Assembly: GCA_002269645.1 (NCBI GenBank)
Contig: NIVC01000692.1
Location: 410,689-474,688 of the forward strand
Source: Macrostomum lignano
Lineage: Eukaryota
Direction: 5' to 3'
Length of the DNA: 64,000 bases
The notes under the pieces are model-generated. The model did not search any database. It worked only from the letters and a program-made list of their open reading frames with translations, and had not been told where the DNA came from. Position numbers and translations under genes: made by a program. This document shows positions 1,663 through 52,800 of this stretch, in pieces. How positions within the stretch are numbered: the stretch's first letter is position 1; the number at the start of each line of letters is the position of its first letter.

Positions 1663-1747
1663 AGTGCTGGTAAATTAGATGAAGAAGAACCGGTAGAGTA
1701 GATAACGGAACGGTTCATCCCGCCTCTCTTTGCCAACCTCGCCGCAG

Positions 1748-13065: not shown

Positions 13066-16000
13066 TCACTTGCCAGGCCTGAGCACATTCTGTCGGAAGC
13101 TGCTCATCACGTTGCCGCTGGGATAGTAGTAGCAGACAACCACAACCTTGTGCGAACCGTCCGCAGCCTGGTGAATCGCCTTGCCGACGCCCAGCTCCTT
13201 GGAGTTCTTCCACACCAGCTGGGTGAAGTTGCCTGGCATTGGATTGGCGATTGTTTGTCTACTTGAAGTAGTCTAACTGGAGTAGACCATGCTATTAGTT
13301 GAGAATTCTTTACTTGAGATTTATAAAGACTGTCCATAGCCAAACTTCCACTCGCTTCCACACCGGTCACAGACACTTCTACACCGGTTACAGGCACGCT
13401 TTCACACCGGTCACAGATACGCTTCTACACCGGTCACAGATACGCTTCTACACCGGTCACAGACACGCTTCTACACCAGCCTGGTACATTCTCTATGCCA
13501 ATACTTACACACAGAAATCAAAGACAGTTTCCAAAATAATTATTTTAAAATCGAAGTCGATAAATCCGTACAATCACCTCGGAAAAAAACTTGTAATGGC
13601 TTCAAAGATATTCGCAAGTGTCTCTCGAAAGCTACACGTGCTGTGAGCCTTGGATATGCAATACAGTTAAATCTCTTGCTCATCTTGCTAGCGAAACTCA
13701 CTACGCTCGTACTAGCTCGTATTTAGATTGGCACTTACCAATTCCATTGATATCGGAGGGCTCCTCGTTATATCGAAATTTCTCCACCTCGTTGTACCAG
13801 TGGTCCACCACGTCGATGGCTGCAAAATGGCATATGATTCAACTATGATTTGATACGAGTAAATTAGATTAGAAGCCTTTTTGCTCTTAGATTTATTATT
13901 TTAAGCTCGTCCCAGCCCAAGCCTAGTCCCGCAGCAAAGCCATGCAGAGACAGTCCCAAGTTCCCAGTCCCGCAGCACAGCCAGAAACAGTCCCAGTCCC
14001 GCAGCACAGCTAGAGACTGTCTCAGTAACAGGTCCCAAAATAATGCCAGAGAGACAGTCCCGGTCTCCAGGCCCGCTCATAGGCCGCACCATTGTAGTCG
14101 GTCTCGCCGTTACTCCAGCGGCTGGCGATGTTCTCGCCCAGCCTTTCCGTCCCGTGGGTGGCGCTGCTGTTGTACAGCTTGGACTTGCCGCACAGCTCGG
14201 TGGCGAATGCCTGCGCCTTGGCTGACAGCTCCGCGTTCAGAGCCAGCCCGGGAACTCCGTGCTGCATCCGGTGATGGTTGTGCCGCTCCAGCACCTCGTG
14301 GCCGAATTGGGACATTTGGCTTTCCTAAACGATGGGTTGGTTCAGCCGTGTTGGATTTATTGTCTGTGTGCGATTAGTTGCATAGGGATTGTCCTAGGGC
14401 TGGGGTGGAATCTTGTCTGTGACCGCGGTGTGGAAGCGTGTCTGTGACCGGTGTGGAAGCGTGTCTGTGACCGCGGTGTGGAAGCGTGTCTATGACCGGT
14501 GTGGAAGCGTATCTGTGACCGGGGTGGAAACATGTCTGTGACCGGTGTGGAAGCGTGTCTGTGACTGGTGCGGAAGCGTGTTGGTGACCGGTGTGGAAGC
14601 GTGTCTGTGACTGGTGCGGAAGCGTGTCGGTGACCGGTGTGGAAGCGAGACTGTAACCGGGAAAAAACGTCTATGACCGGAGTGGAAGCTTGTCTGTGAC
14701 CGGTGTGGAAGCTTGTCTATGACCGGTGTGGAAGCGTGACTGTGACCGGGGAAAAAACGTCTATGACCGGAGTGGAAGCTTGTCTGTGACAGGTGTGGAA
14801 GCTGGTCGGTGACCGGTGTGGAAGCGTGTCTGTGACCGGTGTGAAAGCGCGTCTGACCGGTGTGGAAGCGTGTCTGTGACCGGTGTGGAAGCGTGTCTGA
14901 CCGGTGTGGAAGCGTGTCTGTGACCGGTGTGGAAGCGTGTCTGTGACCGGTGTGAAAGCGTGTCTGACCGGTGTGGAAGAGTTTCTGCGACCGGTGTGGA
15001 AGCGTATCTGTGACCGGGGTGGAAACATGTCTGTGACCGGTGTGGAAGCGTTCTGTAACCGGTGTGGAAGCGTGTCTGTGACCGGTGCGGAAGCGTGTCT
15101 GTGACTGGAGTGAAAGCGTGTCTGTGACGGGGGTGAAAGCGTGTCTGTGACCGGTGTGGAAGCGTGTCTGTGACCGGTGTGAAGCGTGTCTGTGACTGGA
15201 GTGAAAGCGGTTCTGTGACGGGGGTGAAAGCGTGTCTGTGACCGGTGTGGAAGCGTGTCTGTGACCGGTGTGGAAGCGTGTCTGCGACCGGGGTGGAAGC
15301 GTGTCTGTGACTGGGGTGAAAGCGTGTCGGTGACCGGTGTGGAAGCGTTCTGTAACCGGTGTGGAAGCGCGTCTGTGACCGGTGTGAAGCGTGTCTGTGA
15401 CTGGAGTGAAAGCGTGTCTGTGACGGGGGTGAAAGCGTGTCTGTGACCGGTGTGGAAGCGTGTCTGTGACCGGTGTGGAAGCGTGTCTGTGACCGGTGTG
15501 GAAGCGTGTCTGTGACCGGTGTGGAAGCGTGTCTGTGACTGGGGTGAAAGCGTGTCGGTGACCGGTGTGGAAGCGTGTCTGTGACTGGTGTGGAATTAAG
15601 CTGGTCTGGAAGTCTCTACTGCTTGAAGAACATTTGTTATTAATTTTCAATATTTTCAAAGATTTCTTTGCGAAACTGATTGATTTACGACTCCACAGCA
15701 GGTGGTTCTCCTGCTACCAGGGTCCGGCATATTGCTTGACCAGTCAATATCTGCTCTTGTCAAGTCCGATTTGACTCATGCATGAGGAATTCAATTTCGC
15801 AAGTTGAGGCAGTTGATAAGAAAAAAGGAAAATAAATGAAAAAACTTTCTGAGGAAATTAAAAAATTCTTTCGTGACTTCAGAGCAGAATGTTTTTGCGC
15901 GTCAAATTATTTTCGCAATATCCGGTGCCCAGCAGCTCCTCCGCCGACTCACCGTGGCGTCCAGAACTTTGCCTTGCGTTGCCTGCTGCTGCTTCTGCTG

Positions 16001-18290
16001 TTGCTGCTGTTTTTCCGGTGGCGGCTTCAGTTCCGGCTTCTCCTGCCGACGCTCAACGATTTTCTCTTTCTCCTGTTGGGTTTAGTTTAGTGCGGCTGAT
16101 AATTCAGGGTGGCTCGCTGATTTCATTTTCAGGGAAGCTATGCGTCTTAAGCAAAGAGTTCATAAACGAAGAAAATTTTGAGTAAGCTTAATTGACTGAT
16201 TGAGCCCTTCAGTTTAGTTTAGTTTAGTTTAGTTTAGTTTAGTTTAGTTTAGTTTAGTTTAGTTTAGTTTAGTTTACTTTAGTCTATTCTAGTCTAGTTT
16301 AGTCTAGTTTAGTTCAGTTTAGTTTGTTTTGTTTAGTTTAGTTCAGTTTAGTTCAGTTTAGTTTGTTTTGTTTAGTTTAGTTCAGTTTAGTTCAGTTTAG
16401 TTTAGTTTACTTTAGTCTATTCTAGTCTAGTTTAGTTCAGTTTAGTTTGTTTTGTTTAGTTTAGTTCAGTTTAGTTCAGTTTAGTTTGTTTTGTTTAGTT
16501 TAGTTCAGTTTAGTTCAGTTTAGTTTACTTTACTTTACTTTACTTTAGGCTTTTTTCCAAGAGTTTAGGTGGGCTAAGCTAGACAGGCAGACCTTAGGTA
16601 GGCAACTTAGGAAGGTTTTGTTCAGACAAGTGAAGCCTAAGACTCTCTTCTCCCCGCGCGCCCCTAGGAGCCCCGGTGTCTCACATTTCCCTGCTCGTCC
16701 TCGTAGCGAATCCGCTCCCGTTCAACCACAAAAAGTCGGCCATCCTCGCCGCGGACCTCCTCCCGTTCAATTTTGCTGCTGGTGACGCGGCAGCCGGCGG
16801 CGGCCAGCTGCTTGGTGACGGCCGAGCCCGCCGACTCCACCGGCCGAACGTTGGCGACGTAGCGGCCGCGCACGTTGCCAGGAGGTCGGTAGTGCGCCAC
16901 CACCACCACCCGGCTGCCGCTCTGGGCGCGCCCGACGCCAACCTCGCGAGTTCCCAGCCACACCAGCTGGGTGAAGTTGCCGGCCTTGCCGCTGCCGTCC
17001 GCGAAGTTGTACTTGTCGATGTCGCGGTACCACTGGCTGACCACCTCTTCGGCTGGGAATGGAGAGCGGGCCGGCTCTGGAGTAAGACTGGGCCGTTTCT
17101 AGAGTGAGACTGGCATGGCTCGGGGATGAGACTGGTCCGGCTCTGGGGTGAGACTGGACCGGCTCTAGGGTGAGACTAGACTGGCTCTGGAATGAGACTG
17201 GGCCGTTTCTAGGGTGAGACTGAGTCAGCTCTGGGGTGAGACTGTGGAAGCTCTAGGGTGAGACAAGATTAGTTGGCTCTCTAAGATGGGACAAGCTCTA
17301 GTTCAAGGTGAGATATAATAACTCTGGCTTCAAAGACAACAGAAGACCGACTGCGAAGTGAGGATACGACCATAACTAATCCAAGGCGAACCAAATAGAT
17401 TTTAATACGGCCAGATGAAATTCTGGGCCGAGACTGGGTCGGCTTCGCTATAGAAGAGGCCCTGTTGACGTTGAAGCCCATGATAAACCCGAATTATTCT
17501 GTGCAGTTTACAGCTAGAAATTTTCCAGCGCGCATTTTCCAGATTGGAACAGGACCGGCCGCCTGTGGCAAAACTTGCCAACGCGAGCTCGCGCAAATAC
17601 CGATCGATGTGCGAAGTTGTTGCACACCCGAAAGCCGAGGCACTGAATGGGGTTACAGCACAGTCGGTCCGGCGCTTCATTCATTTATGCTGGTTGGGCT
17701 TCTCGAATCAGACTAAGCCACCCTTTTGCCCAGACTGACTTGCTTGCCACTTGGATGGAGGGCGCAGAGCAGCTCTGCGGTAACACGCGTCTGGCTCTCG
17801 CGCCACGACCCCCGCATTCATTTGGGGGCTTGACCGGGAGGTTGTCGTGCGATTCGCAGCCATGAAGACTAACCAGCCAAGGCACAGAGAGTGTACATGA
17901 CTGAGGATTAGAAAGTCAGGGCCGCTGTGCACCCTGTGTGAGCGTGTGCTTGAGTGCGTGCCTGCGTGCAGTATTGACGCTTGTCAGGAGTCAGCGGAAT
18001 GGGCACAATTGCCTCAACGCTGGCTGTGGGACGATGTCGAGTGTCAGAGCCGTCTCACCTGAGATCTCGGCTGCCTGGCCCTCGGCGCTCCGCATGCTGA
18101 TGCACTCGCCACATTCGCCTCGCTTGGCCTCGGCGCTGTTCTCCAAGCTGCCCTTGGCCGCCAGGGCCTCCGCCCAGGCCTGCGCCGTCCGGTCAAGGTC
18201 ACTGGCAGCTCGGAGAGCCGCTGCACCGTGTAGGGCCCGGCGACTGTTCTGCTGCTGCATCAGCGACTGGCGGAACTCTGACAGACTCAT
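13066..18290 (-). CDS. Two-domain CAP/SCP/TAPS protein (GAPR-1/GLIPR2-like, flatworm group-2 VAL-like), about 400 aa; exons 18290-18059, 17052-16685, 16072-15953, 14324-14090, 13819-13739, 13232-13066; probable 5' UTR exon ending at 19434
   Basis: Domain 1: MSLSEFRQSL..QNSRRALHG..AQAWAEALA..CGE..WYRDIDKYNF..GNFTQLVWLGTREVGVG..YRPPGNV. Domain 2: LERHNHHRMQHGVP..AQAFA..LGENIA..WYNEVEKF..GNFTQLVWKNSKELGVG..YYPSGNV..QNVLRPGK*. All introns are GT-AG with matching phases. There is no signal peptide, and both domains share a phase-1 intron before the WY motif. Confidence 0.92.
13355..13485. repeat. Short array of the ACACCGGTCACAGACACGCTT[C/T]C family in the last CAP intron
   Basis: About 5-6 copies, in the same orientation as the 26.4-kb array and opposite to the 14.4-kb array. 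Confidence 0.88.
13905..14035. repeat. Short degenerate GTCCC/GCAGCACAG tandem repeat in a CAP intron
   Basis: Recurrent CAGTCCCAGTCCCGCAGCACAGC-like units. Confidence 0.6.
14415..15590. repeat. ~22-23-bp minisatellite (GTGTGGAAGCGTGTCTGTGACCG) in a CAP intron
   Basis: About 50 copies; reverse complement of the 13.4-kb and 26.4-kb arrays. Confidence 0.95.
16210..16545. repeat. (GTTTA)n pentanucleotide microsatellite with variants, intronic
   Basis: Directly visible AGTTT/AGTTC/ACTTT units. Confidence 0.95.
17065..17265. repeat. ~24-bp degenerate minisatellite (GGTGAGACTGGACCGGCTCTAG-like) beside a CAP acceptor
   Basis: About 8 copies with a GAGACTGG core. Confidence 0.8.
17765..18045 (+). 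mobile_element. tRNA-derived SINE copy with the B-box deleted, in a CAP intron
   Basis: The head GAGCAGCTCTGCGG..CTCTCGCGCCACGACCCCCG and the body GGGAGGTTGTCGTGCGATTCGCAGCCATGA..GGCACAGAGAGTGTACATG..GGAGTCAGCGGAATGGGCA match the copies at 20.9, 28.5 and 41.5 kb. Confidence 0.85.
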
Positions 18291-19090
18291 GACCTGCGGT
18301 GTGTCAGTGTGGGAGGGGACTGGCGGAACTCTGACAGACTCATGACCTGCGGTGTGTCAGTGTGGGAGGGGACTGGCGGAACTCTGACAGACTCATGGCC
18401 TGCGGTGTGTCAGTGTGAAGGGGACTGGCGGAACTCTGACAGACTCATGGCCTGCGGTGTGTCAGTATGGGAGGGGACTGGCGGAACTCTGACAGACTCA
18501 TGACCTGCGGTGTGTCAGTATGGGAGGGGACTGGCGGAACTCTGACAGACTCATTACCTGCGGTGTGTCAGTGTGAAGGGGACTGGCGGAACTCTGACAG
18601 ACTCATGACCTGCGGTGTGTCAGTGTGGGAGGGACTGGCGGAACTCTGACAGACTCATGACCTGCGGTGTGTCAGTGTGGGAGGGGACTGGCGGAACTCT
18701 GACAGACTCATGACCTGCGGTGTGTCAGTGTGGGAGGGGACTGGCGGAACTCTGACAGACTCATGACCTGCGGTGTGTCAGTGTGGGAGGGGACTGGCGG
18801 AACTCTGACAGACTCATGACCTGCGGTGTGTCAGTGTGGGAGGGGACTGGCGGAACTCTGACAGACTCATGACCTGCGGTGTGTCAGTGTGGGAGGGGAC
18901 TGGCGGAACTCTGACAGACTCATGACCTGCGGTGTGTCAGTGTGGGAGGGGACTGGCGGAACTCTGACAGGCTCATGACCTGCGGTGTGTCAGTGTGGGA
19001 GGGGACTGGCGGAACTCTGACAGACTCATGACCTGCGGTGTGTCAGTGTGGGAGGGGACTGGCGGAACTCTGACAGACTCATGGCCTGCT
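18262..19090 (-). repeat. 53-bp tandem array whose unit contains a branch-point-like motif, a 3' splice site and the first 29 nt of the CAP coding exon (about 16 copies)
   Basis: Sense-strand unit is CCCTCCCACACTGACACACCGCAG|GTCATGAGTCTGTCAGAGTTCCGCCAGTC; the last unit continues into the CAP ORF. Confidence 0.95.
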
Positions 19091-21569: not shown

Positions 21570-27884
<6,315 letters not shown>

Positions 27885-28019
27885 GGCCTAGCTGCTGCGG
27901 CGCTTTGCTTCCTAAGGGGAGAAACATTTCTTGCTGGGATGAACATTTTTTAATTCCGCAGTGATGCCTGGAAAACTGGCCGGCCAATCAGCTGCTCGGC
28001 TTGGCTGCGATTGGCGACA

Positions 28020-28278
28020 TCCGGCTAGGACACTGAGACACCCAGCTGGGACACTGAGACACCCAGCTGGGACACTGAGACACCCGGCTGGGACACTGCG
28101 ACACCCGAATGGGACACTTAGACACCCAGCTGGGACTCTGAGACACCCGGCTGGGACACTGAGACACCCGACTGGGACACTTAGACACCCGACTGGGACA
28201 CTGAGACACCCGACTGGGACACTGAGACACCCAGCTGGGACACTTAGACGCCCGAATGGGACACTGAGACACCCGACT
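28020..28278. repeat. 21-bp minisatellite (GGACACTGAGACACCCAGCTG) upstream of the GPCR start
   Basis: About 12 copies. Confidence 0.92.
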
Positions 28279-29047: not shown

Positions 29048-29680
29048 TAATATATCAATGCTAAGCCAGAAAAGCATTTGTTAGGTTCAGTTTGACGGCT
29101 GCCATGCAGCCAAGACAGACACTTTGAGTCACAGGCGTCGATGCTAAAGGGGGAACCAAGGTGAGGCCGAAATCCAGACTTGCATTGCTGTTTTAGACAT
29201 TTTGTCTTAGTAACTGCCAAGCAGCTTTAGGCGTCTTCGGTACACCGGGGCTCAGTTGCTAATTCTGAGCAAATGTTTCTGCAGCCACGAACCCCCCCCC
29301 CAGCAACCCCTCCCTTCTGTTTTCATTCAGGCCCGACCCTCTGCCCTCAAGCTCGGAGATTTTCTATTGTGCAAACAGTGGCCCCTTAGGGCAAGTCTCC
29401 TCCAGCTTGCAGTCACTCGGAGAGAAGAATTTCTATAGGGGCACAGAGGCCCAGTTCCATTGTGTGCGTGCCCAGACAATTTTGCCATCTATAGGCGGCC
29501 CGGCCCGCAGCGCCCGAGCCCGGCAGTTTATAATCGGAGACCCCGCGGCTCCTCTGCTACCCGCCTTTCGCCCCCTCAGCAGCTTAGAAATTCTCCGTAG
29601 CCGGCTTGGAGCAGAGCGGCGCACCCAGTTTCTCGCTTCTGTCACTTTTGACTCCCACCGCCTCCCGACCGCTCAGCATC

Positions 29681-30382
29681 ATGGACTTCCTGACCGCTTA
29701 CGAGGCCATCGACACCGACTTCTCCGGCGAGATCACCAGCGAGGAGCTTGAGGCCTACTGCCGCAAGCACAATTACGAGGACAAATTTGTCGAGGTAAGA
29801 TTGCTGCGTGAGACTGAGGCTTCTGAGCAGCTGAGAATACCCCTTGGGTCACTCCTATGCGGCACTCCCGACGCGTCGCCTTGCAGAAGTGGCTCCGCCT
29901 GTTCGATCACGACAACTCCGGGACCATCACCATCGAGGAGTTCTGCGAGACTCTCGGCCTCGTGCCCAAGCAGGAGTACATGTGAGCAGCTGAATTTCAC
30001 GGCGATCGAATAAATCAATAAATCCCAACAATCCCGAATCCCCCCACCAACAACCCAACCCAGGGAGAAGGTGCAGATCAACCGCGAGAAGTCCTCCGGC
30101 GTGATGGACGGCGTCAAGATCATCACAGAGGACCCGGACATGACCGACGAGCTGAAGGAGGAGATCGTCCAGCTGGCGCGCACCGCGCAGGAGCAGTTCG
30201 AAAACGAGCGCGACATTGCCCGCTACATGAAGTCCGAGCTGGACGCGAAGTTCGACCGGGCCTGGCACGTGATCGTCGGCCGGTTCCAGTACGGCTCCTT
30301 CTGCACGCACGAGGTCGGCCGCCTGTTCCACTTCTACGTGGTGCGGAATGCCATCCTGGTGTGGAAGACGCCGGACTACTGA
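29681..30382 (+). CDS. Tegument-allergen-like (TAL) protein: two EF-hands plus a dynein-light-chain-like domain, 175 aa; exons 29681-29794, 29887-29981, 30064-30382
   Basis: MDFLTAYEAIDTDFSGEITSEELEAYCRKHNYEDKFVE|KWLRLFDHDNSGTITIEEFCETLGLVPKQEY|MEKVQ..DMTDELKEEIV..DIARYMKSELDAKFDRAWHVIVG..GSFCTHE..ILVWKTPDY*. It shares YC, W..FD, IEEFC..GL and W[KR]TP with Sm22.6/SmTAL1 as recalled. Splice phases are consistent (528 nt). Confidence 0.93.
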
Positions 30383-31134
30383 TAGACGCCGGCTCCCCCC
30401 TGCTGCCCACGTACTGACTGATCTGTTAGCAGTAAGAAATATCTACCAGCCGTCACTACTCATTACTCTTATCAGTAGTCACTCGCGCTACTAAGGAAGC
30501 CAGCCTACTGTGTCTTGACAATTTTCATTTTTGCTCATCGATTTTTAAATTGTCTTCCATTGATTAAAAACCGCGCAAAATTACCTGCCGCTTTGTGTGA
30601 ATCCAATTTTTATTGCCCGCACTGAATACATTGTCAGCCAGGCGGTGAGCCGAGTGGTTTCAGATCCGCCAGATTAGTTACAATTGGCAGCGCAGCGAGT
30701 TTGTGTCTCGTGTCTCGCATCCGGCACTAACAGTGGGCTCAATTAACCGTGCTCTGGCACAAGCAGCCGTTGAGACAGAAAACAATTGCTTTTTGATTTG
30801 TCTGTTTCAGATTTTGCCGATCAATTCCTGTGCGCCTTAAATCCGCATGAAATCTGACAGTCTGCACTGGCATTGTGACATCCGCTTGGTGCTAGGCAGT
30901 GAAAGCAGCCAGTCTGAGCATTGCTGATCGGTTCATAAGCAATTTATTCGATTGCCTGTCCTACAATAACTGACTTGCCAGTGTCAGTATAGCCGTTATT
31001 TTTCGCATGCTATTAATGCTAGAGAGAGCATGTAGCATTTCTTTACCCCAATCACTAATAGTACGAGCTAGCGCGCTACGCTCACTTTAAAACACCTGGC
31101 ACCAACCAAACCCGAAGCCGTTACCACCTCATCT

Positions 31135-33868
31135 GACTTCTAAGCACACTGATCGATTCCCCTCTCACATCTAAGCACACTGATCGATTCCCCTCTGACA
31201 TCTAAGCACACTGATCAATTCCCCTCTGACATCTAAGCACACTGATCGATTCCCCTCTCACATCTAAGCACACTGATCGATTCCCCTCTGACATCTAAGC
31301 ACACTGATCAATTCCCCTCTGACATCTAAGCACACTGATCGATTCCCCTCTCACATATAAGCACACTGATCAATTCCCCTCTCACATCTAAGCACACTGA
31401 TCAATTCCCCTCTCACATCTAAGCACACTGATCGATTCCCCTCTCACATCTAAGCACACTGATCGATTCCCCTCTCACATCTAAGCACACTGATCGATTC
31501 CCCTCTCATATCTAAGCACTCTGATCGATTCCCCTCTGACATCTAAGCACACTGATCGATTCCCCTCTCACATCTAAGCACACTGATCGATTCCCCTCTC
31601 ACATCTAAGCACACTGATCGATTCCCCTCTCACATCTAAGCACTCTGATCAATTCTCCTCTCACATCTAAGCACACTGATCGATTCCCCTCTGACATCTA
31701 AGCACACTGATCGATTCCCCTCTCACATCTAAGCACACTGATCGATTCTCCTCTCACATCTAAGCACTCTGATCGATTCCCCTCTCACATCTAAGCACTC
31801 TGATCGATTCCCCTCTCACATCTAAGCACACTGATCGATTCCCCTCTCACATCTAAGCACACTGATCGATTCCCCTCTCACATCTAAGCACACTGATCGA
31901 TTCCCCTCTCACATATAAGCACACTGATCAATTCCCCTCTGACATCTAAGCACACCGATCAATTCTCCTCTCACATCTAAGCACACTGATCGATTCCCCT
32001 CTCACATCTAAGCACACTGATCGATTCCCCTCTCACATCTAAGCACACTGATCGATTCCCCTCTCACATCTAAGCACACTGATCAATTCCCCTCTGACAT
32101 CTAAGAACACTGATCAATTCTCCTCTCACATCTAAGCACACTGATCGATTCCCCTCTCACATCTAAGCACACTGATCGATTCCCTCTCACATCTAAGCAC
32201 ACTGATCGATTCCCCTCTCACATCTAAGCACACTGATCGATTCCCCTCTCACATCTAAGCACACTGATCGATTCCCCTCTCACATCTAAGCACACTGATC
32301 GATCCCCCTCTGACATCTAAGCACACTGATCGATTCCCCTCTCACATCTAAGCACACTGATCGATTCCCCTCTCACATCTAAGCACACTGATCGATTCCC
32401 CTCTCACATCTAAGCACACTGATCGATTCCCCTCTCACATCTAAGCACACTGATCGATTCCCCTCTCACATCTAAGCACACTGATCGATTCCCCTCTCAC
32501 ATCTAAGCACACTGATCGATTCCCCTCTGACATCTAAGCACACTGATCGATTCCCCTCTGACATCTAAGCACACTGATCGATTCCCCTCTCACATCTAAG
32601 CACACTGATCGATTCCCCTCTCACATCTAAGCACACTGATCGATTCCCCTCTCACATCTAAGCACACTGATCGATTCCCCTCTCACATCTAAGCACTCTG
32701 ATCGATTCCCCTCTTGCATCTAAGCACACTGATCGATTCCCCTCTCACATCTAAGCACACTGATCGATTCCCCTCTCACATCTAAGCACACTGATCGATT
32801 CCCCTCTCACATCTAAGCACACTGATCGATTCCCCTCTCACATCTAAGCACACTGATCGATTCCCCTCTCACATCTAAGCACACTGATCGATTCCCCTCT
32901 CACATCTAAGCACACTGATCGATTCCCCTCTCACATCTAAGCACACTGATCAATTCCCCTCTGACATCTAAGAACACTGATCAATTCTCCTCTCACATCT
33001 AAGCACACTGATCGATTCCCCTCTGACATCTAAGCACACTGATCGATTCCCCTCTCACATCTAAGCACACTGATCGATTCCCCTCTCACATCTAAGCACA
33101 CTGATCGATTCCCCTCTCACATCTAAGCACACTGATCGATTCCCCTCTCACATCTAAGCACACTGATCGATTCCCCTCTCACATCTAAGCACACTGATCG
33201 ATTCCCCTCTCACATCTAAGCACACTGATCGATTCCCCTCTCACATCTAAGCACACTGATCGATTCCCCTCTCACATCTAAGCACACTGATCGATTCCCC
33301 TCTCACATCTAAGCACACTGATCGATTCCCCTCTCACATCTAAGCACACTGATCGATTCCCCTCTCACATCTAAGCACACTGATCGATTCCCCTCTCACA
33401 TCTAAGCACACTGATCGATTCCCCTCTCACATCTAAGCACACTGATCGATTCCCCTCTCACATCTAAGCACACTGATCGATTCCCCTCTCACATCTAAGC
33501 ACACTGATCGATTCCCCTCTCACATCTAAGCACACTGATCGATTCCCCTCTCACATCTAAGCACTCTGATCGATTCCCCTCTTGCATCTAAGCACACTGA
33601 TCGATTCCCCTCTGACATCTAAGCACACTGATCGATTCCCCTCTGACATCTAAGCACACTGATCGATTCCCCTCTCACATCTAAGCACACTGATCGATTC
33701 CCCTCTCACATCTAAGCACACTGATCGATTCCCCTCTCACATCTAAGCACACTGATCGATTCCCCTCTCACATCTAAGCACACTGATCGATTCCCCTCTC
33801 ACATCTAAGCACACTGATCGATTCCCCTCTCACATCTAAGCACACTGATCGATTCCCCTCTTGCATCT
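31135..33868. repeat. 31-bp minisatellite (CACATCTAAGCACACTGATCGATTCCCCTCT), about 88 copies, intergenic
   Basis: Highly homogeneous tandem array between the TAL and Nkx1 3' ends. Confidence 0.98.
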
Positions 33869-34734
33869 AAACGCACCGAGCGTTTCTCTTAAGCAAGCGA
33901 ATTCTCTAATGTTAAACTTTCTTTTCCAAAGCCCAGCTGCTATTGTTTAAGCGTCAGATCAGTCGAATAGTTACCGAATTTCGCATTAAAACAAATTGTA
34001 TTTTTTTCAACCCGTATTGCCAAATATGTGGGTGGAATTCAAAAATTTATATATGATTATGATTCTGATTGCTTGGACCTGGCAACATCATACCTCCCCT
34101 GTGAACTCGGCGCCCAGAATCCAATAACATTTAAAACTGCTCTTGAGCCGACGATGAGGCTTGCAGTCTCTCAGCCTCAGCAGCGGCGGACACTTGAACC
34201 CGAGCTCGCCCGCCTGATCGCAATCGCTATGAGTTCAAAAACATTTTCTGTCTTGCTGCGCATGCCGCTATTGTGGTGTCTCTGAAATTGCTGTCGGGGC
34301 TGGGGTGGCTGGGGGTAAAGCTTTTGATTTTTGACAGCAAAATGGAGTCAATGACAGCTGACTAATTAATTTTTGCCAGTCGATTGTTGTCAGATTGATA
34401 GTTTTCATGTTTCGGTATTTATATTTTTACACGGGATTTTCAGCAAGATGAAAGGCACACAAAGCAGCCGGCGCCGCTAAAGCAGGAAAAAAGCGACAAA
34501 GAATGGGGCGGGAGCGCTGATCAATCAGGGAAATTGCCGACGCTCGGAATGGGAAAATGTTTATCTGGGATTGCTGTAGGATTGGGCTTGACAGTGCTGT
34601 GCGGGGTTCAGCGATAGACCTTGAAGCAGAGGGCAACAACACGGATTAAAGCAAGAAGGCGGTGCTTCATATGCAGTTTCAAGTAAAGCTCGGTGTACCA
34701 AATTTGTGTAACTAGCGGTCTTTCTCTCAGTTTG

Positions 34735-35931
<1,197 letters not shown>

Positions 35932-37479: not shown

Positions 37480-38220
37480 TGGGATCAATCTGGTCAGGGC
37501 CTCGGGGATCAATCTGGTCAGGGTCTCGGGAATCAATCTGGTCAGGGCCTCGGGAATCAATCTGGTCAGGGCCTCGGGAATCAATCTGGTCAGGGCCTCG
37601 GGAATCAATCTGGTCAGGGTCTCGGGAATCAATCTGGTCAGGGCCTCGGGGATCAATCTGGTCAGGGCCTCGGGAATCAATCTGGTCAGGGCCTCGGGAA
37701 TCAATCTGGTCAGGGCCTCGGGAATCAATCTGGTCAGGGCCTCGGGAATCAATCTGGTCAGGGTCTCGGGAGTCAAGCTTGTCAGGGCCTCGGGAATCAA
37801 TCTGGTCAGGGTCTCGGGAATCAATCTGGTCAGGGCCTCGGGAATCAATCTGGTCAGGGCCTCGGGAATCAATCTGGTCAGAGCCTCGGGGATCAATCTG
37901 GTCAGAGCCTCGGGAATCAATCTGGTCAGGGTCTCGGGAGTCAAGCTTGTCAGGGTCTCGGGTGTCAAGCTTGTCAAGGTCTCGGGTGTCAAGGTTGTGA
38001 GGGCCCCGGGAGTCAAGCTTGTCAGGGCCTCGAGTGTCAAGCTTGTCAGGGCCCCGGGAGTCAAGCTTGTCAGGGCCTCGGGTGTCAAGGTTGTCAGGGC
38101 CCCGGGTGTCAAGCTTGTCAGGGCCTCGAGTGTCAAGCTTGTCAGGGCCCCGGGAGTCAAGCTTGTCAGGGCCTCGGGTGTCAAGGTTGTCAGGGCCCCG
38201 GGTGTCAAGCTTGTCAGGTC
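37480..38220. repeat. 24-bp minisatellite with two variant domains (TCAATCTGG then TCAAGCTTG types)
   Basis: About 30 copies of GGGAATCAATCTGGTCAGGGCCTC, switching to GGGAGTCAAGCTTGTCAGGGCCTC-type units in the 3' third. Confidence 0.95.
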
Positions 38221-44907: not shown

Positions 44908-46813
44908 TCATTTCTTATCCGGCGCGGCGGCTGACGCGGCCGGCGCGGGCGAGGCGCCACCGGCCTTAGCGCCGGCTTGCCGCTTGCGCAGCATTTCGGC
45001 CAGCTCGTCGCGATTCGCCAGCAGTTTGTGCCAGTACTCCGGCTTGTTCTCCCAGAAGTCCTTGCTCCGACAGAACCACTCAAAGTAGCAGTGATGCTCG
45101 CCCTCGGGGAAGTAATAGTACACCGGCCGGCCGCATTCCGTCCTCTGCTGCTTTTTCTCCTTGTTTTCTTTGAAGAAGTTTTCGACATTCAGCTTCATAA
45201 GGCCGGTAAGGCCCGCAGTTTCAAGGTTGTGAGCGTACATCGACAGGTCAAAGATGTTCAGCAGGTGCTTACGGATGCCGATGTAGTTCACGTCGGCGAA
45301 GTCGATTTTCTTTTCAACGAAGCCGCAGTAGTTGGGGTCGCCCATCTTGGCCATGTCCACCATCATGTCCTTCATCTGGGAGCCGCCGTCCCCCCATTTG
45401 TCGTTTCGCTCTTCAAAAAAGTCTTTGTACTTTTCTATTTCTTGCTCAACATCCTCAGTGAGATGGCCAAGCTTTTTGCCGGACTCCTTCTTGAGAAAGA
45501 ACCAAAGGTACTGCTTTTCCTCGTACAGAACCTCATCACCAGTCTTCATAGTCATGTCCTCCTCACCGCGGTCCTTCAGCTCTTGAAGCTTCATCATCTG
45601 CCTATCGAACATGCCGTCCCAGGGGAAGTGGTTCTTGAGCAGTCGCAGCAGCACGTAGCAGGAGGACTCAATCTCACACAGCGGAGTCCGCGGCGCCATC
45701 TGGTGGTTGGAGCGAGGCGCCCACCTGCGGTTGCCCAGCGGAGCCACCAGAGTAGACGTCCAGGTCTCCTTGTACTTTGTCACAAGACCATAATCGATCA
45801 GGTAGATAGTGTTGCCGTTCTCACCTTTGCCAGTCATCAGCTGATCGCACTTGAGATCATTGTGCGTCAGGCCTAGAGCCGTGTCCTGAATGCACTGCAT
45901 CCTGGCGAAGAACTGATCCCCAACCATGAAGACGGTGCTGACATCAGCGGGGAGTTTTGCATATTGGTTGCTGTTAAGTAAAATCTATAGTATCGCCGAA
46001 AGTGTACAAAGAAAAGAAAAATTAAGAATCCTACCGAGTTGACAGACGCTGCTCGTTTTGACGGCAATTGTAGCTGCAGATTTCCATCATGTCCTCCATA
46101 TCCGGGCCGCAGATTTCGAACATGAGAAAGTGAAAGCCGTACATTTTGGTCTTTTTCGAGCTCTCAATATGCATGTAGGTGTAGTCGCCAAGGTGACCAA
46201 ACGCGTACGGTCGAGTGAAGCCCCGGGTATCTTTGTAGCCGAACCTAATAAGGAAATGCAAGTACGACCGGCTCCAAGCAACTATTGCTATGTCCATAGA
46301 AATATAAATTGAAAATTTAATAAATAACTTGAAATATTACCTAGAAAAAATGTTGTTCAGCGTGTTGTACTCCTTGTAAACAGAGAATCTCTCGGGGTCT
46401 GCGTCTGGTAGGTTCTTAGGTGTAATGGGGAAGTTCTCCACTTGGAAGAGAAACGCTGTTTCGCATTTCATGGCCACGCCTTGGTTTTTCTTCAGTACCA
46501 CGTCCGATTTATTGGGCGCCTTCAGGGCCTCTACCTGATTGAGGTATTCGTGCTTCTCGTCCCTGCCCAGTGTGACAGTAATGCTTTCGAGATCGTCGAA
46601 TGTGACATCCTTCTTGGCCGTGATGAGAAACACGTGACCGAATGCTCCAGCGCCCAGAAATATAGCAGATTCTGAGTTGAAACTCTTCTTCAAGATCGGA
46701 TCCTTGTAGATTTCGTTAGAGTAGAACTCGGTCAGCTTCTTCTTGACGATTTCCTCCTTCTCGGCCGGATTCACTGTCCTCTTTTTTGACCGCTTCTTGC
46801 TAGCGTCAGCCAT
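44908..46813 (-). CDS. Divergent casein-kinase-1-family (CK1/TTBK/VRK-like) protein kinase, about 581 aa; exons 46813-46341, 46244-46035, 45970-44908
   Basis: GAGAFGHVF Gly-loop, VAMKCE, FLMFEICGPDMEDMMEICS (compare CK1 MELLGPSLEDLFNFCS), TVFMVGDQFFARMQCI, HNDLKCDQLMTGKGENGNTIYLIDYGLVTKYKE and EIESSCYVL..FPW. Both introns are phase 2 and the total is 1746 nt. Confidence 0.88.
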
Positions 46814-49854: not shown

Positions 49855-52800
49855 ATGGCGGAAGCGCCAGCGGACTCTGGTGCCAATATTGATGAAGCGG
49901 TCAGCCAGCTGGCCGAAGAAGCGCGCCTACTTGGCGTTGAATTACGCAGCGGCGCTTGGCGCGCTCAACGGCGCCTTCAACAGCTGACAGAGCGACTCAA
50001 GCCGGTTGAAGCTGAGCAATGCCGACTTGGGCGGCTGCGCGTCGATGCCCCCGACCTGCCGAGTGCGGACCTGCTGCGCGGTCTTGCCGGCCTGATGCAG
50101 CGCAACGAGATGCTGAGAGACCAAGTTGCTGAGCAGGAGTGCTCACTGCGACTACTGCTGGACCAGGTGCGTTGAGGCCCCCGTAGCTCCGCACTCGGCA
50201 ACAGTTATTTTACAGTAGAACTGCCAGTTGGTTAGGAGAGCCATGCTATTCCACCCACCCCTAGCAGCAGTGGCTCCGATTCGGATGCAGCAGGGAGATC
50301 CGGGTAGTGCCTGTGTCCGTCCTCAATGTTACGGACCAGTAGCACTTTGGTAGCGGACGAGCTGTCTGAAAATACAGGAGAGATCGGGGTTCGGGTCGAT
50401 ATAGTTAGTCTGTTCCGAGTAAAGGCGGGGCATTCGCTGATGAAGTGCTTCGCATTCACAATACTGGAGAGGCAGAATAGGCAGTTTTCAGTGCGGACTT
50501 TTTAGAAAGTTGATGTGTACTGACCAGGTGTTCTTGACACCTTGGGCTAGTTAACTAGGACTGGTTGAGATTGAAGAATTTTCGTCGAAATCCTTTAATA
50601 ACTCTCGATTATCTTGGCTGTAGTTAATTTGAATCTTGCTGACAATATAATGCAGGCAAGATTGAGGAATGTTGTGCCAAATGTTTACCGTCATGAAAAT
50701 GCCTAATGGTCTTCAAACGGGGCTATGAGGCTGAAAGTCTATGAAGCTTTCAGGCCTGCCTCAAGTATCTTGCCAGTAACAGTGGGGTGTCAGTAACAGG
50801 AGACACCATCTACAGAGGCGCAGATCCCTGTGACTGATGCTGAAAGCTGTTTGGAACCAGCTGCTTTTCAGTGAGTGCATGACTACCTTTCAGCCTTTCA
50901 GGCGGGAAATTGCAGGGAAAAGTTTTCGGGGCAATTCTCGGACTCTTCAGTAAAAATTGTTAATGTGTCTGTTTATGCTCACCAGTACGATCGCTAGATG
51001 CATACAGGGCACATTTGTTCTCGCTAATTCACTGATTATCTTCACCGGCCGAAATTGCAGGTGTCAGTCTATCAGGCGGCGGAGCGCCTACCCGAGCTTG
51101 AGTCGGAGTGTCGCCGCCTCTCTGAGCAGCTGGCCAGACTGCCAGACTGCCAGACTGAGGCTTGTCAGCGGCGTTTGGCGCCGATTCCACCGAGTTGCTG
51201 TTTCAACTGAAAGCAACTGAGAGCAGGTGATTGAGGACGTTAAATTTTAGTTCTTCTTACACTGTGTCTTTTCGAAAACCCTCAAACTGCACTTGACTGT
51301 AGTGCTTTTACCGTTTCGTCTTTAGATGGAGCTGGCCTATTCGGTTGCTATGGAAACGCAGCGAAAACTGTTGGAACTCTTGAACTCTGCTGCAGAGGAG
51401 CACGAGCGGACTTCAGCCAGATTGGAGGATCTGTTGTCTGAAACAGAGCTGGAACCGAATCCAGTGGAGGCAACCGTCATGGTTAGTGCATGGGCAAATT
51501 GTACCGTGTCAGGATAGTTTAGAGCTAGCAAAGCATTATAAGAAAAAAAAATCTTACGAAAATTTTTTTTAGCTAAAAGCCGTTGCCAACAGAATTTTTC
51601 GCAGTGCCAGGAATCGAATCGATTTGAACGAAGAGTACCTTGGCGAGACCGCGATCAAAAGTCTGCTTCAGATTATTCGAGTGAGTAATTCGTTTATGAT
51701 ATTTATTGTTGTAAAATGAATAGCTTGAATGAAGGATATTTACATACCGATATAATAACTACGACCTATTTATACAGGAAGAGACGCTTCAAGCTGCAGG
51801 TAAAGCCAACCAGTTGACCGAAAGCAAAGCACGTGCGGCGGCGGCTTACATTGATAAACCGAATTCTGATGAGGCGGAGGCGCGCGAGAATTTAGAAATT
51901 TCTAGACAGGCTTTGGATTATAGCGAACCAGAAGAGCTCATTGGAAAGCCGCATGGAGTTGAAGTGGAACCAAGTTCAGCTGCATCAAGACCTGGTTCAG
52001 GAAATTCTGCCAGAAGTTGCACCCAGGCCAGTATCCCTGAAGATGCTAGTTCCGTTGTGTCCTCATTCGTGGATTTGATTTCGCATAGCAGTTCAGCTGA
52101 CAAGGACCCAACAACTCTACAAGTTTCCAATGGGACAAAGTCTGCTAACCAGTCTGAAGTTCCCACAGAGCCCCGAGTTGGTGAGCTTGTAGCAGCCACT
52201 GATCTCACCCAACAATCGTTGTCTCGCAAAGGAGCGGAAGTTATTGAAAGCATATCAAAAGCTAGGGAGCTGAAAGTTCTCACAACAGACTCAAATGCTG
52301 TTGAGTTGGCAGAGGACGGCTTTTTGACCGTTCTTAATGACGATTCTGACCATTATTCGGTTTCTAGTGCAAAAGTTGGCCGATCAGTTGCAAGCACTCA
52401 TCAAACGGACGTTGACCTGAGTCTGCTACTGGCTCCAAGCACAAAGTATTTTGATTCTGAGGAGAGAATTAAATACGAAGCTGCTACCTTTGATGAGATT
52501 TCGAGTGAAGAATCGTCTGAAATCCGGTCAATTGTTTCGATTAAGCCCGGTGGAGATTCTGATGCTGTCACCGATTGTGTCAGCAGTGCCAGTGCGAACT
52601 CCAACAACAGACAACAGCTAGAACAGCTGCTTTGCTCCTCCAATCAAGGAAATAAAGATAGAAGTAGTTGCAACTACAAACGCGGAACCTGTGCAATCAA
52701 AGCTGATAATAGTGCGAAACTGAATTTGAGTATCCATTTGACTAGTAAAGTGGACCAATTTGCTGGAGATGAAAGTCTGAGGACAAGCTTCCTGTCATCC

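What the first reader, a model, noticed from the sequence alone, without database searches (positions are those of the whole stretch)
29681..30382. Intact tegument-allergen-like (EF-hand + DLC) gene in what looks like a free-living flatworm genome
Seen in sequence: a complete 175-aa 2xEF-hand + dynein-light-chain fusion with Sm22.6-type signature residues. Both EF loops are canonical (DTDFSGEITSEE and DHDNSGTITIEE). Established knowledge: TALs are described mainly from trematode and cestode teguments as IgE targets, and in several characterised ones only the second EF-hand binds Ca2+. Inference: if the host is a macrostomorph, the family predates parasitism and the syncytial tegument, and this copy may preserve an ancestral two-site Ca2+ sensor.
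Basis: partly seen in the sequence, partly recalled or inferred. Interest (0 to 1): 0.72.

Follow-up and report, generated by a model that had tools for sequence, protein, structure and literature searches.

The report
Tegument-allergen-like gene in a free-living flatworm

Summary
Positions 29681-30382 (+) hold a three-exon gene with GT-AG introns of 92 and 82 nt. It encodes a 175-aa protein with two EF-hands followed by a dynein-light-chain (DLC) domain.

The DNA is 100% identical over 6.7 kb to Macrostomum lignano scaffold NIVC01000692.1. The protein is GenBank "hypothetical protein BOX15_Mlig001380g1".

- A profile built only from named trematode and monogenean TALs matches it end to end (158 bits; canonical LC8 scores 44-50 bits).
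- The best full-length structural match of the predicted fold is Fasciola FhCaBP4.
- Its two intron positions and phases are shared with TAL genes of cestodes, trematodes and a monogenean.

M. lignano has at least nine such proteins in three lineages. The window gene belongs to the most conservative lineage: both EF loops keep every Ca2+-ligand position, and the DLC domain keeps 15 of 26 LC8 functional residues, against 4-8 in classic TALs. This lineage has a cestode (Schistocephalus) member.

dN/dS against the nearest paralogue is 0.08.

The likely function, which is inferred, is a Ca2+-sensing, DLC-dimerised adaptor.

The sequence is already in databases. What appears to be unremarked is the point that papers from 2015 to 2026 call the family parasite-specific.

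The parts
29681..29794 (+). Exon 1 (aa 1-38): start codon and EF-hand 1
   Evidence: The donor is GTAAGA at 29795. The intron after codon 38 (phase 0) is shared with six other TAL genes.
29711..29746 (+). EF-hand loop 1, DTDFSGEITSEE
   Evidence: All Ca2+-ligand positions are canonical. Phe at position 4 is excluded by strict PS00018. An aromatic residue at this position is conserved in six of the seven window-clade sequences in that alignment (five others besides the window protein).
29795..29886 (+). Intron 1, 92 nt, GT..AG, phase 0
29887..29981 (+). Exon 2 (95 nt, aa 39-70 in part): the conserved KW..LFD motif, EF-hand 2 and the FCxxLGL motif
   Evidence: Exon 2 is 95 nt in Mlig001654g1, Mlig005207g1 and the Schistocephalus gene, and 89 nt in the Clonorchis, S. 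mansoni and Cichlidogyrus genes.
29905..29940 (+). EF-hand loop 2, DHDNSGTITIEE
   Evidence: Exact match to PROSITE PS00018.
29982..30063 (+). Intron 2, 82 nt, GT..AG, phase 2. If it were retained, a stop codon follows at once (..EYM*).
30064..30382 (+). Exon 3: linker helix, DLC domain and the TGA stop
30128..30370 (+). Dynein light chain type-1 (LC8-like) domain, aa 92-172
   Evidence: Pfam PF01221, 1.6e-24. The predicted fold superposes on LC8 structures at 1.2-1.4 A with a target TM-score of about 0.9. It keeps 15 of 26 LC8 functional positions.
29527..29534 (+). TATA-like TTTATAAT, about 150 nt upstream of the ATG. This is a motif match only.
   Evidence: Not tested.
30563..30568 (+). ATTAAA, a possible polyadenylation signal 181 nt after the stop. 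This is a motif match only.
   Evidence: Not tested.

Best explanation
The gene is an intact, selectively maintained member of the EF-hand + dynein-light-chain (TAL/CaBP) family in the free-living macrostomorph flatworm Macrostomum lignano.

Shown: the gene model, the domain architecture, the species, full-length homology to parasite TALs, shared intron positions, and membership of a distinct conservative subclade that also contains a cestode protein.

Inferred mechanism: the 20.7-kDa acidic protein forms a homodimer through its LC8-like C-terminal domain, by the beta-strand pairing seen in LC8 and in the FhCaBP4 crystal. The N-terminal EF-hand pair binds up to two Ca2+ ions. Ca2+ binding changes the EF-DLC interface and so alters what the dimer binds. 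The protein would thus act as a Ca2+-switched adaptor or hub on microtubule- or vesicle-associated partners. Because the DLC domain retains most LC8 groove and interface residues, partners may include LC8-type short linear motifs.

Evolutionary reading: the EF-DLC fusion arose once, before Macrostomorpha and Neodermata diverged. It had probably already split into several lineages by then. It was later recruited into the syncytial tegument of parasites, where most copies lost EF ligands and LC8-like residues.

The confidence of 0.8 applies to identity and family membership, which I put at about 0.9. The mechanistic part I put at about 0.55.
For: Gene model and domains.

Species: 100% DNA identity over 6702 bp to NIVC01000692.1. 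A second copy on NIVC01000769.1 is 97.4% identical and encodes the same protein.

Homology:
- In an exhaustive HMMER search of 1.84 billion representatives, the best non-paralogue hits are EF-DLC proteins of 170-220 aa. Every named one is a flatworm, apart from one copepod EST entry.
- An HMM built from 15 named trematode and monogenean TALs matches aa 3-174 with 158 bits, against 44-50 bits for canonical LC8.
- Among PDB sequences the only full-length match is FhCaBP4, 3.1e-18. The EF domain matches the Clonorchis 20.8-kDa tegumental protein best, 1.8e-13.

Structure: the AF2 model has pLDDT 93. The top Foldseek hit is 9voa_A, FhCaBP4.

Introns, in window numbering:
- Codon 38, phase 0, is shared by the window gene, Mlig005207g1, Mlig001654g1, Schistocephalus, Clonorchis, S. 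mansoni Smp_169200 and Cichlidogyrus.
- The second intron is phase 2 in all of them. It lies at the identical codon in the window clade and two codons earlier in the others.

Phylogeny: the window clade has 95% NJ bootstrap support.

Selection: dN/dS = 0.08 against Mlig005207g1. Both CDS differences from the second copy are synonymous. GC3 = 0.93.

Mechanism by analogy: SmTAL1-3 dimerise. SmTAL1 has two functional Ca2+ sites, SmTAL2 has one and SmTAL3 has none (PMC4300400). FhCaBP4 is a DLC-mediated homodimer with a Ca2+-responsive EF-DLC interface (PMC12347358).

Residues: both EF loops have full ligand sets, and 15 of 26 LC8 functional positions are identical.
Against: - There is no transcript, protein, localisation or binding data for this gene. 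None of the tools gave RNA evidence, and no Logan or transcriptome contig carries the exact protein.
- Ca2+ binding, dimerisation and partner binding are inferred from sequence and from parasite homologues, which differ among themselves.
- Phe at position 4 of EF loop 1 is atypical.
- Tyr75 of LC8 is His here, and there is a one-residue insertion before the LC8 beta3 strand. LC8-type motif binding may therefore be altered.
- The trees are neighbour-joining on 175 columns, and deep branches are unsupported.
- The closest non-Macrostomum relatives (P0006, P0008, P0009, P0010) could not be assigned to a taxon.
Confidence: 0.8

Rival explanations
1. It is functionally a true dynein light chain. 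On this view it is a Ca2+-sensing LC8 variant that sits in cytoplasmic or axonemal dynein, for example in the ciliated epidermis, protonephridia or sperm of Macrostomum, and tunes motor or ciliary activity. It would not be a free adaptor. This is a rival about function, not about family membership.
For: - The DLC domain is closer to canonical LC8 than to classic TAL DLC domains: 38-44% identity against 23-36%, and PDB E-values of 1.7e-18 for Dyn2 against 2.7e-5 for the FhCaBP2 DLC domain.
- 15 of 26 LC8 functional positions are kept.
- The predicted fold superposes on LC8 chains from axonemal cryo-EM maps.
- SmTAL3 was reported to be associated with dynein (cited in PMC3317908).
Against: - LC8 itself is mostly a dynein-independent hub (established knowledge).
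- No localisation data exist.
- The insertion and the Y75H change sit in the binding strand region.
- M. lignano presumably also has canonical LC8. This was not tested.
Confidence: 0.25
2. The EF-DLC arrangement in Macrostomum is an independent, convergent fusion of an EF-hand pair to an LC8 gene. On this view it is not homologous to parasite TALs as a whole gene.
For: In a midpoint-rooted NJ tree of DLC domains, the window clade sits on the canonical-LC8 side of the tree with 65% support. The DLC domain looks LC8-like.
Against: - The intron between EF1 and EF2 is shared (same codon, phase 0), as is the phase-2 intron after EF2, with cestode, trematode and monogenean TAL genes.
- The EF domain carries the family-wide W40, C58 and L61-G62 motif and matches a TAL EF domain best in the PDB.
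- The one-residue insertion after the conserved WH..G stretch of LC8 is shared by the window clade and classic TALs and is absent from LC8.
- The cestode Schistocephalus has a member of the window clade with the same 95-nt exon 2.
Confidence: 0.04
3. It is a gene-model artefact. On this view two neighbouring genes (a small EF-hand gene and a DLC gene) have been wrongly joined, or the locus produces only EF-only or DLC-only products.
For: There is no transcript evidence for this locus. Retention of intron 2 would end the reading frame immediately (..EYM*), giving a 70-aa EF-only product. An internal Met84 precedes the DLC domain.
Against: - The same architecture occurs in more than 45 proteins.
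- It occurs on intronless mRNA-like environmental contigs that carry one continuous EF-DLC reading frame.
- It occurs in the FhCaBP4 crystal structure (PMC12347358).
- The splice sites are canonical and the phases are consistent.
- The same exon structure recurs in the paralogues.
Confidence: 0.03
4. It is a silent or decaying duplicate in a polyploid, repeat-rich genome.
For: M. lignano is described as a hidden polyploid (abstract of PMC10468722, shown). It has many TAL paralogues. The gene is embedded among minisatellites.
Against: - The reading frame and splice sites are intact.
- dN/dS = 0.08 against the paralogue, with dS of about 1.5.
- The two genomic copies differ only at synonymous sites.
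- GC3 = 0.93.
Confidence: 0.05

Closest known systems
Tegument allergen-like (TAL) / CaBP family of parasitic flatworms (SmTAL1-14, FhCaBP1-4, CsTAL/CsTegu, OvCaBP)
   Same: - Two N-terminal EF-hands, a helical linker and a C-terminal DLC domain, about 20 kDa in all.
- Full-length profile match.
- The best full-length structural match is FhCaBP4.
- Family-wide conserved residues are present: W40, F44-D45, C58, L61-G62, K126, W137.
- Intron positions are shared.
   Different: - The host is free-living and has a cellular ciliated epidermis, not a syncytial tegument.
- Both EF loops keep all ligand positions, whereas most parasite TALs have one or two degenerate loops (PMC4300400).
- The DLC domain is much more LC8-like: 15 of 26 functional positions against 4-8.
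- Exon 2 is 95 nt against 89 nt.
- Tegument location and IgE reactivity, which give the family its name, cannot apply or are untested.
Schistocephalus solidus A0A183SDY2 / A0A0X3PQ89 (annotated 'Antigen Sm21.7'), the closest named parasite relative
   Same: It lies in the same clade with 95% bootstrap support. Intron positions and phases are identical and exon 2 is 95 nt. It has the EF-DLC architecture.
   Different: It is 203 aa long with a longer Pro/Ala-rich linker. EF loop 2 is degenerate at position 12 (DMENTGHITADE, followed by I). Only 8 of 26 LC8 positions are kept. It comes from a parasite.
LC8 / DYNLL dynein light chain (PF01221)
   Same: - The fold superposes at 1.2-1.4 A.
- Identity is 38-44%.
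- The WHxIVG, GS..THE, FY and A.L..K motifs are conserved, including the interface His55.
   Different: - It carries an N-terminal EF-hand pair and a linker.
- It has a one-residue insertion before beta3.
- Y75 is His, F86 is Trp and S88 is Thr, and there is a C-terminal PDY extension.
- LC8 is an 89-aa protein that is nearly invariant across animals, so this is not its orthologue.
Ca2+-sensing subunits of dynein (Chlamydomonas LC4, calaxin). This is a functional analogy from general knowledge.
   Same: EF-hand Ca2+ sensing is coupled to a dynein-associated module.
   Different: Those are separate EF-hand polypeptides that bind heavy chains. Here the sensor is fused to an LC8-type domain. No homology beyond the EF-hand is implied, and this was not tested here.

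Membership tests
TAL / CaBP (EF-hand + DLC) family | [quoted passage not shown] | tested here: met
   Pfam EF-hand_7 at aa 5-59, plus EF-hand_1, 5 and 6. Loops at aa 11-22 and 45-56.
TAL / CaBP (EF-hand + DLC) family | [quoted passage not shown] | tested here: met
   PF01221 at aa 92-172, 1.6e-24. AF2 model with pLDDT 93 and LC8 superposition.
TAL / CaBP (EF-hand + DLC) family | Full-length sequence homology to characterised members, not just shared domains | tested here: met
   An HMM of 15 named neodermatan TALs matches aa 3-174 at 158 bits, against 44-50 bits for LC8. FhCaBP4 aligns over aa 14-174, 3.1e-18. Smp_169200 and other 'Tegument antigen' proteins are full-length hits.
TAL / CaBP (EF-hand + DLC) family | Common gene structure (evidence of a single origin of the fusion) | tested here: met
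   The phase-0 intron at window codon 38 occurs in seven of eight genes examined. The phase-2 intron lies at codon 69, or two codons earlier.
TAL / CaBP (EF-hand + DLC) family | Homodimerisation through the DLC domain | not testable with these tools
   Only a monomer was modelled. The interface His and the strand residues are conserved. Dimers have been shown for SmTAL1-3 and FhCaBP4 (PMC4300400, PMC12347358).
TAL / CaBP (EF-hand + DLC) family | Location in the (syncytial) tegument | not testable with these tools
   No expression or localisation data were available. Macrostomum has no neodermatan tegument (established knowledge).
TAL / CaBP (EF-hand + DLC) family | IgE/IgG4 antigenicity in infected hosts ('allergen-like') | not testable with these tools
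   This cannot apply to a free-living species. The name describes the parasite members, not the fold.
TAL / CaBP (EF-hand + DLC) family | Restriction to parasitic flatworms, as stated in the literature | tested here: not met
   The host is M. lignano. This feature is a claim about distribution, which the gene contradicts. It is not a structural criterion.
Canonical LC8/DYNLL | Stand-alone protein of about 89 aa, highly conserved across eukaryotes | tested here: not met
   The protein is 175 aa with an EF-hand pair. Identity to canonical LC8 representatives is 38-44%, and there is a one-residue insertion.
Canonical LC8/DYNLL | Conserved dimer-interface and peptide-groove residues | tested here: inconclusive
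   15 of 26 positions are identical and several more are conservative. Y75H is not conservative. The list of positions comes from general knowledge of LC8 structures.

The most novel reading that the evidence does not exclude
The window clade (four M. lignano genes, unassigned environmental transcripts and one Schistocephalus gene) would be the least-changed descendant of the original EF-hand-LC8 fusion. On this reading it is a two-site Ca2+ switch that still binds LC8-type linear motifs or dynein, acting in the ciliated epidermis or other microtubule-rich cells of free-living flatworms. The classic tegumental TALs of parasites would be derived copies that lost EF ligands and the LC8 groove when they were recruited to the syncytial tegument. 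If so, Macrostomum would give the first genetically tractable route to the unknown cellular function of TALs.
Probability: 0.3. Interest if true: 0.6.

Novelty: new member of a known kind. Interest (0 to 1): 0.42.

Why it matters
TALs are major IgE targets in schistosomiasis and are promoted as parasite-specific drug and vaccine targets. Their cellular function is nevertheless described as largely unknown (bioRxiv 10.64898/2026.04.22.720116), and papers still call the EF-DLC fusion unique to parasitic flatworms or to trematodes (PMC4300400, PMC12347358).

An intact, constrained, multi-copy TAL repertoire in M. lignano shows three things:
- The family predates Neodermata and the syncytial tegument.
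- 'Parasite-specific' is an overstatement.
- The ancestral role can be tested in a free-living species that has RNAi and transgenesis (PMC5730564 reports transgenesis).

The sequence itself is not new. It is already deposited as a hypothetical protein.

Tried and rejected
- The word-indexed protein search found only M. lignano paralogues. With a 32-sequence alignment as query it returned 13 proteins and missed several of its own inputs. With P0009 as query it returned only P0009 itself. Distribution therefore rests on the exhaustive HMMER search and cluster look-ups.
- I could not name the organisms behind the nearest non-Macrostomum relatives. P0006, P0008 and P0010 lie on JGI metagenome or metatranscriptome contigs of about 1 kb. 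P0009 is only a UniParc entry. P0008's contigs look like AT-rich mRNAs with one continuous reading frame, which does not identify a taxon.
- The Haliotis hit (P0011) and a Hymenolepis hit (P0013) turned out to be DLC-DLC tandems, not EF-DLC. I rejected them as evidence for TALs outside flatworms.
- A 'Tegument antigen' from the copepod Lepeophtheirus (P0052) groups among parasite TALs without support. I suspect flatworm contamination and did not pursue it.
- A Tara Oceans transcript (P0018) groups with schistosome TAL11-like proteins with 100% support. It is probably from a marine digenean larva.
- Six of nine literature searches, each pairing TAL terms with Macrostomum, Schmidtea, planarian or free-living, found no description of free-living TALs. 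The library lacks most subscription journals, so absence there is not proof.
- Rfam and tRNA scans of the window found nothing.
- Comparing the two genomic copies gave too few differences (2 in the CDS, 2 in the introns) for a selection test.

Full report
**1. What is in the sequence**

Positions 29681-30382 on the + strand contain a compact three-exon gene. The exons are 29681-29794, 29887-29981 and 30064-30382, separated by GT..AG introns of 92 and 82 nt. Joined, they give 528 nt, which is 175 codons plus TGA. The product is 20.7 kDa with pI 4.7.

Pfam finds an EF-hand pair at aa 5-59 and a type-1 dynein light chain domain at aa 92-172 (1.6e-24). Loop 2 matches the strict PROSITE EF-hand pattern. 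Loop 1 has every liganding position in canonical form but has Phe at position 4, which the strict pattern disallows.

The window holds a single copy. The coding sequence has GC3 = 0.93 in a window of about 50% GC. A TATA-like TTTATAAT lies about 150 nt upstream, and an ATTAAA lies 181 nt after the stop. These are motif matches only.

**2. Where the window comes from**

The protein is identical to GenBank 'hypothetical protein BOX15_Mlig001380g1 [Macrostomum lignano]'. The gene with 3 kb on each side is 100.000% identical over 6702 bp to NIVC01000692.1:437369-444070 of assembly GCA_002269645.1.

A second scaffold, NIVC01000769.1, carries a 97.4%-identical copy that encodes the same protein. The two CDS differences are both at synonymous third positions. 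The window is dense with minisatellites.

**3. Is it a TAL?**

Four independent lines of evidence say yes.

(a) Exhaustive sequence search. HMMER against 1.84 billion representative proteins gave 1630 hits. After the M. lignano paralogues, the best are EF-then-DLC proteins of 170-220 aa at 30-48% identity over the whole length. DLC-only proteins score lower. Every such protein that carries a name is a flatworm:
- Cestodes: Schistocephalus (annotated 'Antigen Sm21.7'), Hymenolepis, Taenia, Mesocestoides.
- A monogenean: Cichlidogyrus.
- Trematodes: 'Tegument antigen' of Schistosoma, Clonorchis, Opisthorchis and Paragonimus, and S. mansoni Smp_169200.
- The one exception is a copepod EST entry.

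(b) Profile test. A profile HMM built only from 15 named trematode and monogenean TALs matches aa 3-174 of the window protein over HMM positions 4-180 of 180, with 158 bits. Canonical LC8 proteins get 44-50 bits, on the DLC part only.

(c) Structure. An AlphaFold2 model (pLDDT 93.1) has as its best Foldseek hit in the PDB the full-length Fasciola hepatica FhCaBP4 (9voa_A, 3.9e-12). This is followed by dozens of LC8 chains that superpose on the C-terminal domain at 1.2-1.4 A. By sequence, the EF domain's best solved relative is the Clonorchis 20.8-kDa tegumental protein (1.8e-13).

(d) Gene structure. I rebuilt exact exon models for eight TAL genes. In window numbering:
- A phase-0 intron after codon 38, between EF1 and EF2 and just before the invariant KW, is present in the window gene, Mlig005207g1, Mlig001654g1, Schistocephalus, Clonorchis P0160, S. 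mansoni Smp_169200 and Cichlidogyrus P0021.
- All seven also have a phase-2 intron after EF2. It lies at the identical codon (exon 2 = 95 nt) in the three M. lignano genes and Schistocephalus, and two codons earlier (exon 2 = 89 nt) in the two trematodes and the monogenean.

Convergent fusion is therefore very unlikely.

**4. Position within the family**

A neighbour-joining tree of 36 full-length proteins (175 columns, 100 bootstraps) puts the window protein in a clade with 95% support. The clade contains Mlig005207g1 (81% identical), Mlig001654g1, A0A1I8I0B9, three environmental sequences, one UniParc-only sequence and the Schistocephalus protein.

M. lignano has two further TAL lineages:
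- A0A1I8GY77 groups weakly (65%) with a Schistosoma 'Tegument antigen' cluster.
- Mlig010873g2, Mlig015343g1 and Mlig027993g1 form their own clade (100%). Mlig015343g1 has lost the two N-terminal introns. It has a phase-0 intron exactly 171 nt before the end of the coding sequence (the stop codon included), as does the third intron of the Cichlidogyrus gene.

This suggests that the family had already diversified before Macrostomorpha and Neodermata separated. That conclusion rests on weakly resolved deep branches.

**5. What is special about the window clade**

It is the most conservative clade in both domains.
- EF loops. The loops of the window protein, its close paralogues and three of the four unassigned relatives keep all ligand positions. 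Most parasite TALs have at least one degenerate loop. This agrees with biochemistry showing two functional sites in SmTAL1, one in SmTAL2 and none in SmTAL3 (PMC4300400), and EF-hand 2 as the main site in FhCaBP4 (PMC12347358).
- DLC domain. I took 26 LC8 positions involved in the dimer interface and peptide groove, a list drawn from general knowledge of LC8 structures. The window protein keeps 15. Other M. lignano TALs keep 7-10, and classic parasite TALs keep 4-8.
- Identity. The DLC domain is 38-44% identical to canonical LC8 and 23-36% identical to classic TAL DLC domains.
- Shared indels. The one-residue insertion after the WHxIVGR motif is shared by the window clade and all other TALs but not by LC8. 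A two-residue stretch near the start of the domain is shared with LC8 and missing in classic TALs.

The window clade thus looks like an intermediate between LC8 and the classic TALs.

**6. Is the gene functional?**

- The reading frame and splice sites are intact.
- Against the paralogue Mlig005207g1, dN = 0.119 and dS is about 1.48, giving dN/dS = 0.08.
- The paralogue keeps the same intron positions, but its introns are about 1 kb and 3.7 kb.
- I had no RNA evidence.

**7. Most likely mechanism (inferred)**

The mechanism is proposed by analogy with LC8 and with the apo FhCaBP4 homodimer, where DLC strands pair across a two-fold axis and the EF-DLC interface responds to Ca2+ (PMC12347358). 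The M. lignano protein is probably a DLC-mediated homodimer whose EF-hand pair binds up to two Ca2+ ions and changes partner binding.

Because much of the LC8 groove is retained, it may still bind LC8-type linear motifs, possibly including dynein intermediate chain. Whether it acts in cilia, vesicle traffic or elsewhere is unknown.

**8. Comparison with the literature**

- TALs are called 'found only in parasitic flatworms' (PMC4300400, 2015).
- The fusion is called 'found only in trematodes' and a 'parasite-specific target' (PMC12347358, 2025).
- The family is called 'specific to parasitic flatworms', with function 'largely unknown' (bioRxiv 10.64898/2026.04.22.720116, 2026).
- A 2023 paper says 'unique to the platyhelminths' (PMC10212073).
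- A 2012 Echinococcus EST paper lists a cluster, whose best match was an S. mansoni 'Tegumental protein', with weak BLAST hits in Schmidtea (62.8 bits) and M. lignano (50.4 bits) ESTs, without comment (PMC3510090).
- Searches pairing TAL terms with Macrostomum, Schmidtea, planarian or free-living returned no description of free-living TALs. The library omits most subscription journals.

**9. Verdict**

The sequence is already public, annotated only as a hypothetical or EF-hand protein. What is added here:
- Explicit assignment to the TAL family.
- Evidence for a single ancient origin, from shared introns.
- Recognition of an LC8-like, two-site subclade shared with a cestode.
- A multi-lineage TAL repertoire in a free-living flatworm.

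I rate it a new member of a known kind. Interest is moderate. It corrects a repeated claim and offers a tractable model for a family of unknown function, but it would not greatly surprise a flatworm genomicist.

Nothing here bears on making an organism more harmful.

Noticed in passing
window 39-9201, 14405-15595, 18265-19089, 22745-24772, 26433-28275, 31132-33870, 37484-38218, 61097-63163: The window is unusually dense in long minisatellite arrays with periods of 21-53 bp and up to 96 copies, plus a (CTAT)128 run. Several cause extreme GC skew at 1-6000. One 31-bp x 88 array starts 750 bp downstream of the TAL stop codon.
   Followed up: partly
window 14405-15595 and 26433-27331 (also 13353-13477): The same 23-bp unit forms two long arrays in opposite orientation: GTGGAAGCGTGTCTGTGACCGGT and its exact reverse complement. 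They bracket about 11 kb. This could mark the ends of a large mobile element or an inversion.
   Followed up: no
window 35238-35768 (-): An ORF with a Pfam Homeodomain hit (4.9e-12). The sequence ([33 protein letters not shown]...TETQV) looks NK1-class from memory. The homeodomain stops after TETQV, as if split by an intron. It is probably an exon of a homeobox gene about 5 kb from the TAL gene on the other strand.
   Followed up: partly
window 51814-60634 (+): Very long open reading frames (459, 1506 and 1111 aa) with no Pfam hit. The last 5.5 kb or so is a 66-bp (22-aa) acidic repeat, VEPDAERVDQPANSAAASDTDL, in roughly 80 copies. This is possibly a large repetitive protein gene, or a minisatellite that happens to stay open.
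   Followed up: partly
window 44908-45927 (-): A 339-aa ATG-initiated ORF without a Pfam hit. It contains a protein-kinase-like stretch (HNDLKCDQL...IDYGLVTKY), reminiscent of a degenerate CK1/TTBK-type catalytic loop.
   Followed up: no
P0052 (GenBank ADD38633.1, Lepeophtheirus salmonis): A 173-aa 'Tegument antigen' with EF-DLC architecture is deposited under a parasitic copepod. It is the only named non-flatworm TAL among the hits and groups among parasite TALs. It is possibly contamination from a flatworm living on the louse or the salmon.
   Followed up: no
P0018 (MERC, ERR1711872) and L001-L003 (JGI 3300030740, 3300030593; SRR7081432): TAL-family transcripts turn up in environmental data. 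A Tara Oceans sequence groups with schistosome TAL11-like proteins (100% bootstrap). A 186-aa member of the window clade lies on AT-rich mRNA-like contigs from two JGI samples and one SRA run. The source organisms are unknown.
   Followed up: partly
L012 (NIVC01002030.1) compared with window 29681-30382: The 81%-identical paralogue Mlig005207g1 has the same intron positions, but its introns are 967 and 3664 nt, against 92 and 82 nt here. A DLC-only model (Mlig005207g2, P0005), its locus tag consecutive with that of Mlig005207g1, is 77% identical over the DLC part.
   Followed up: partly
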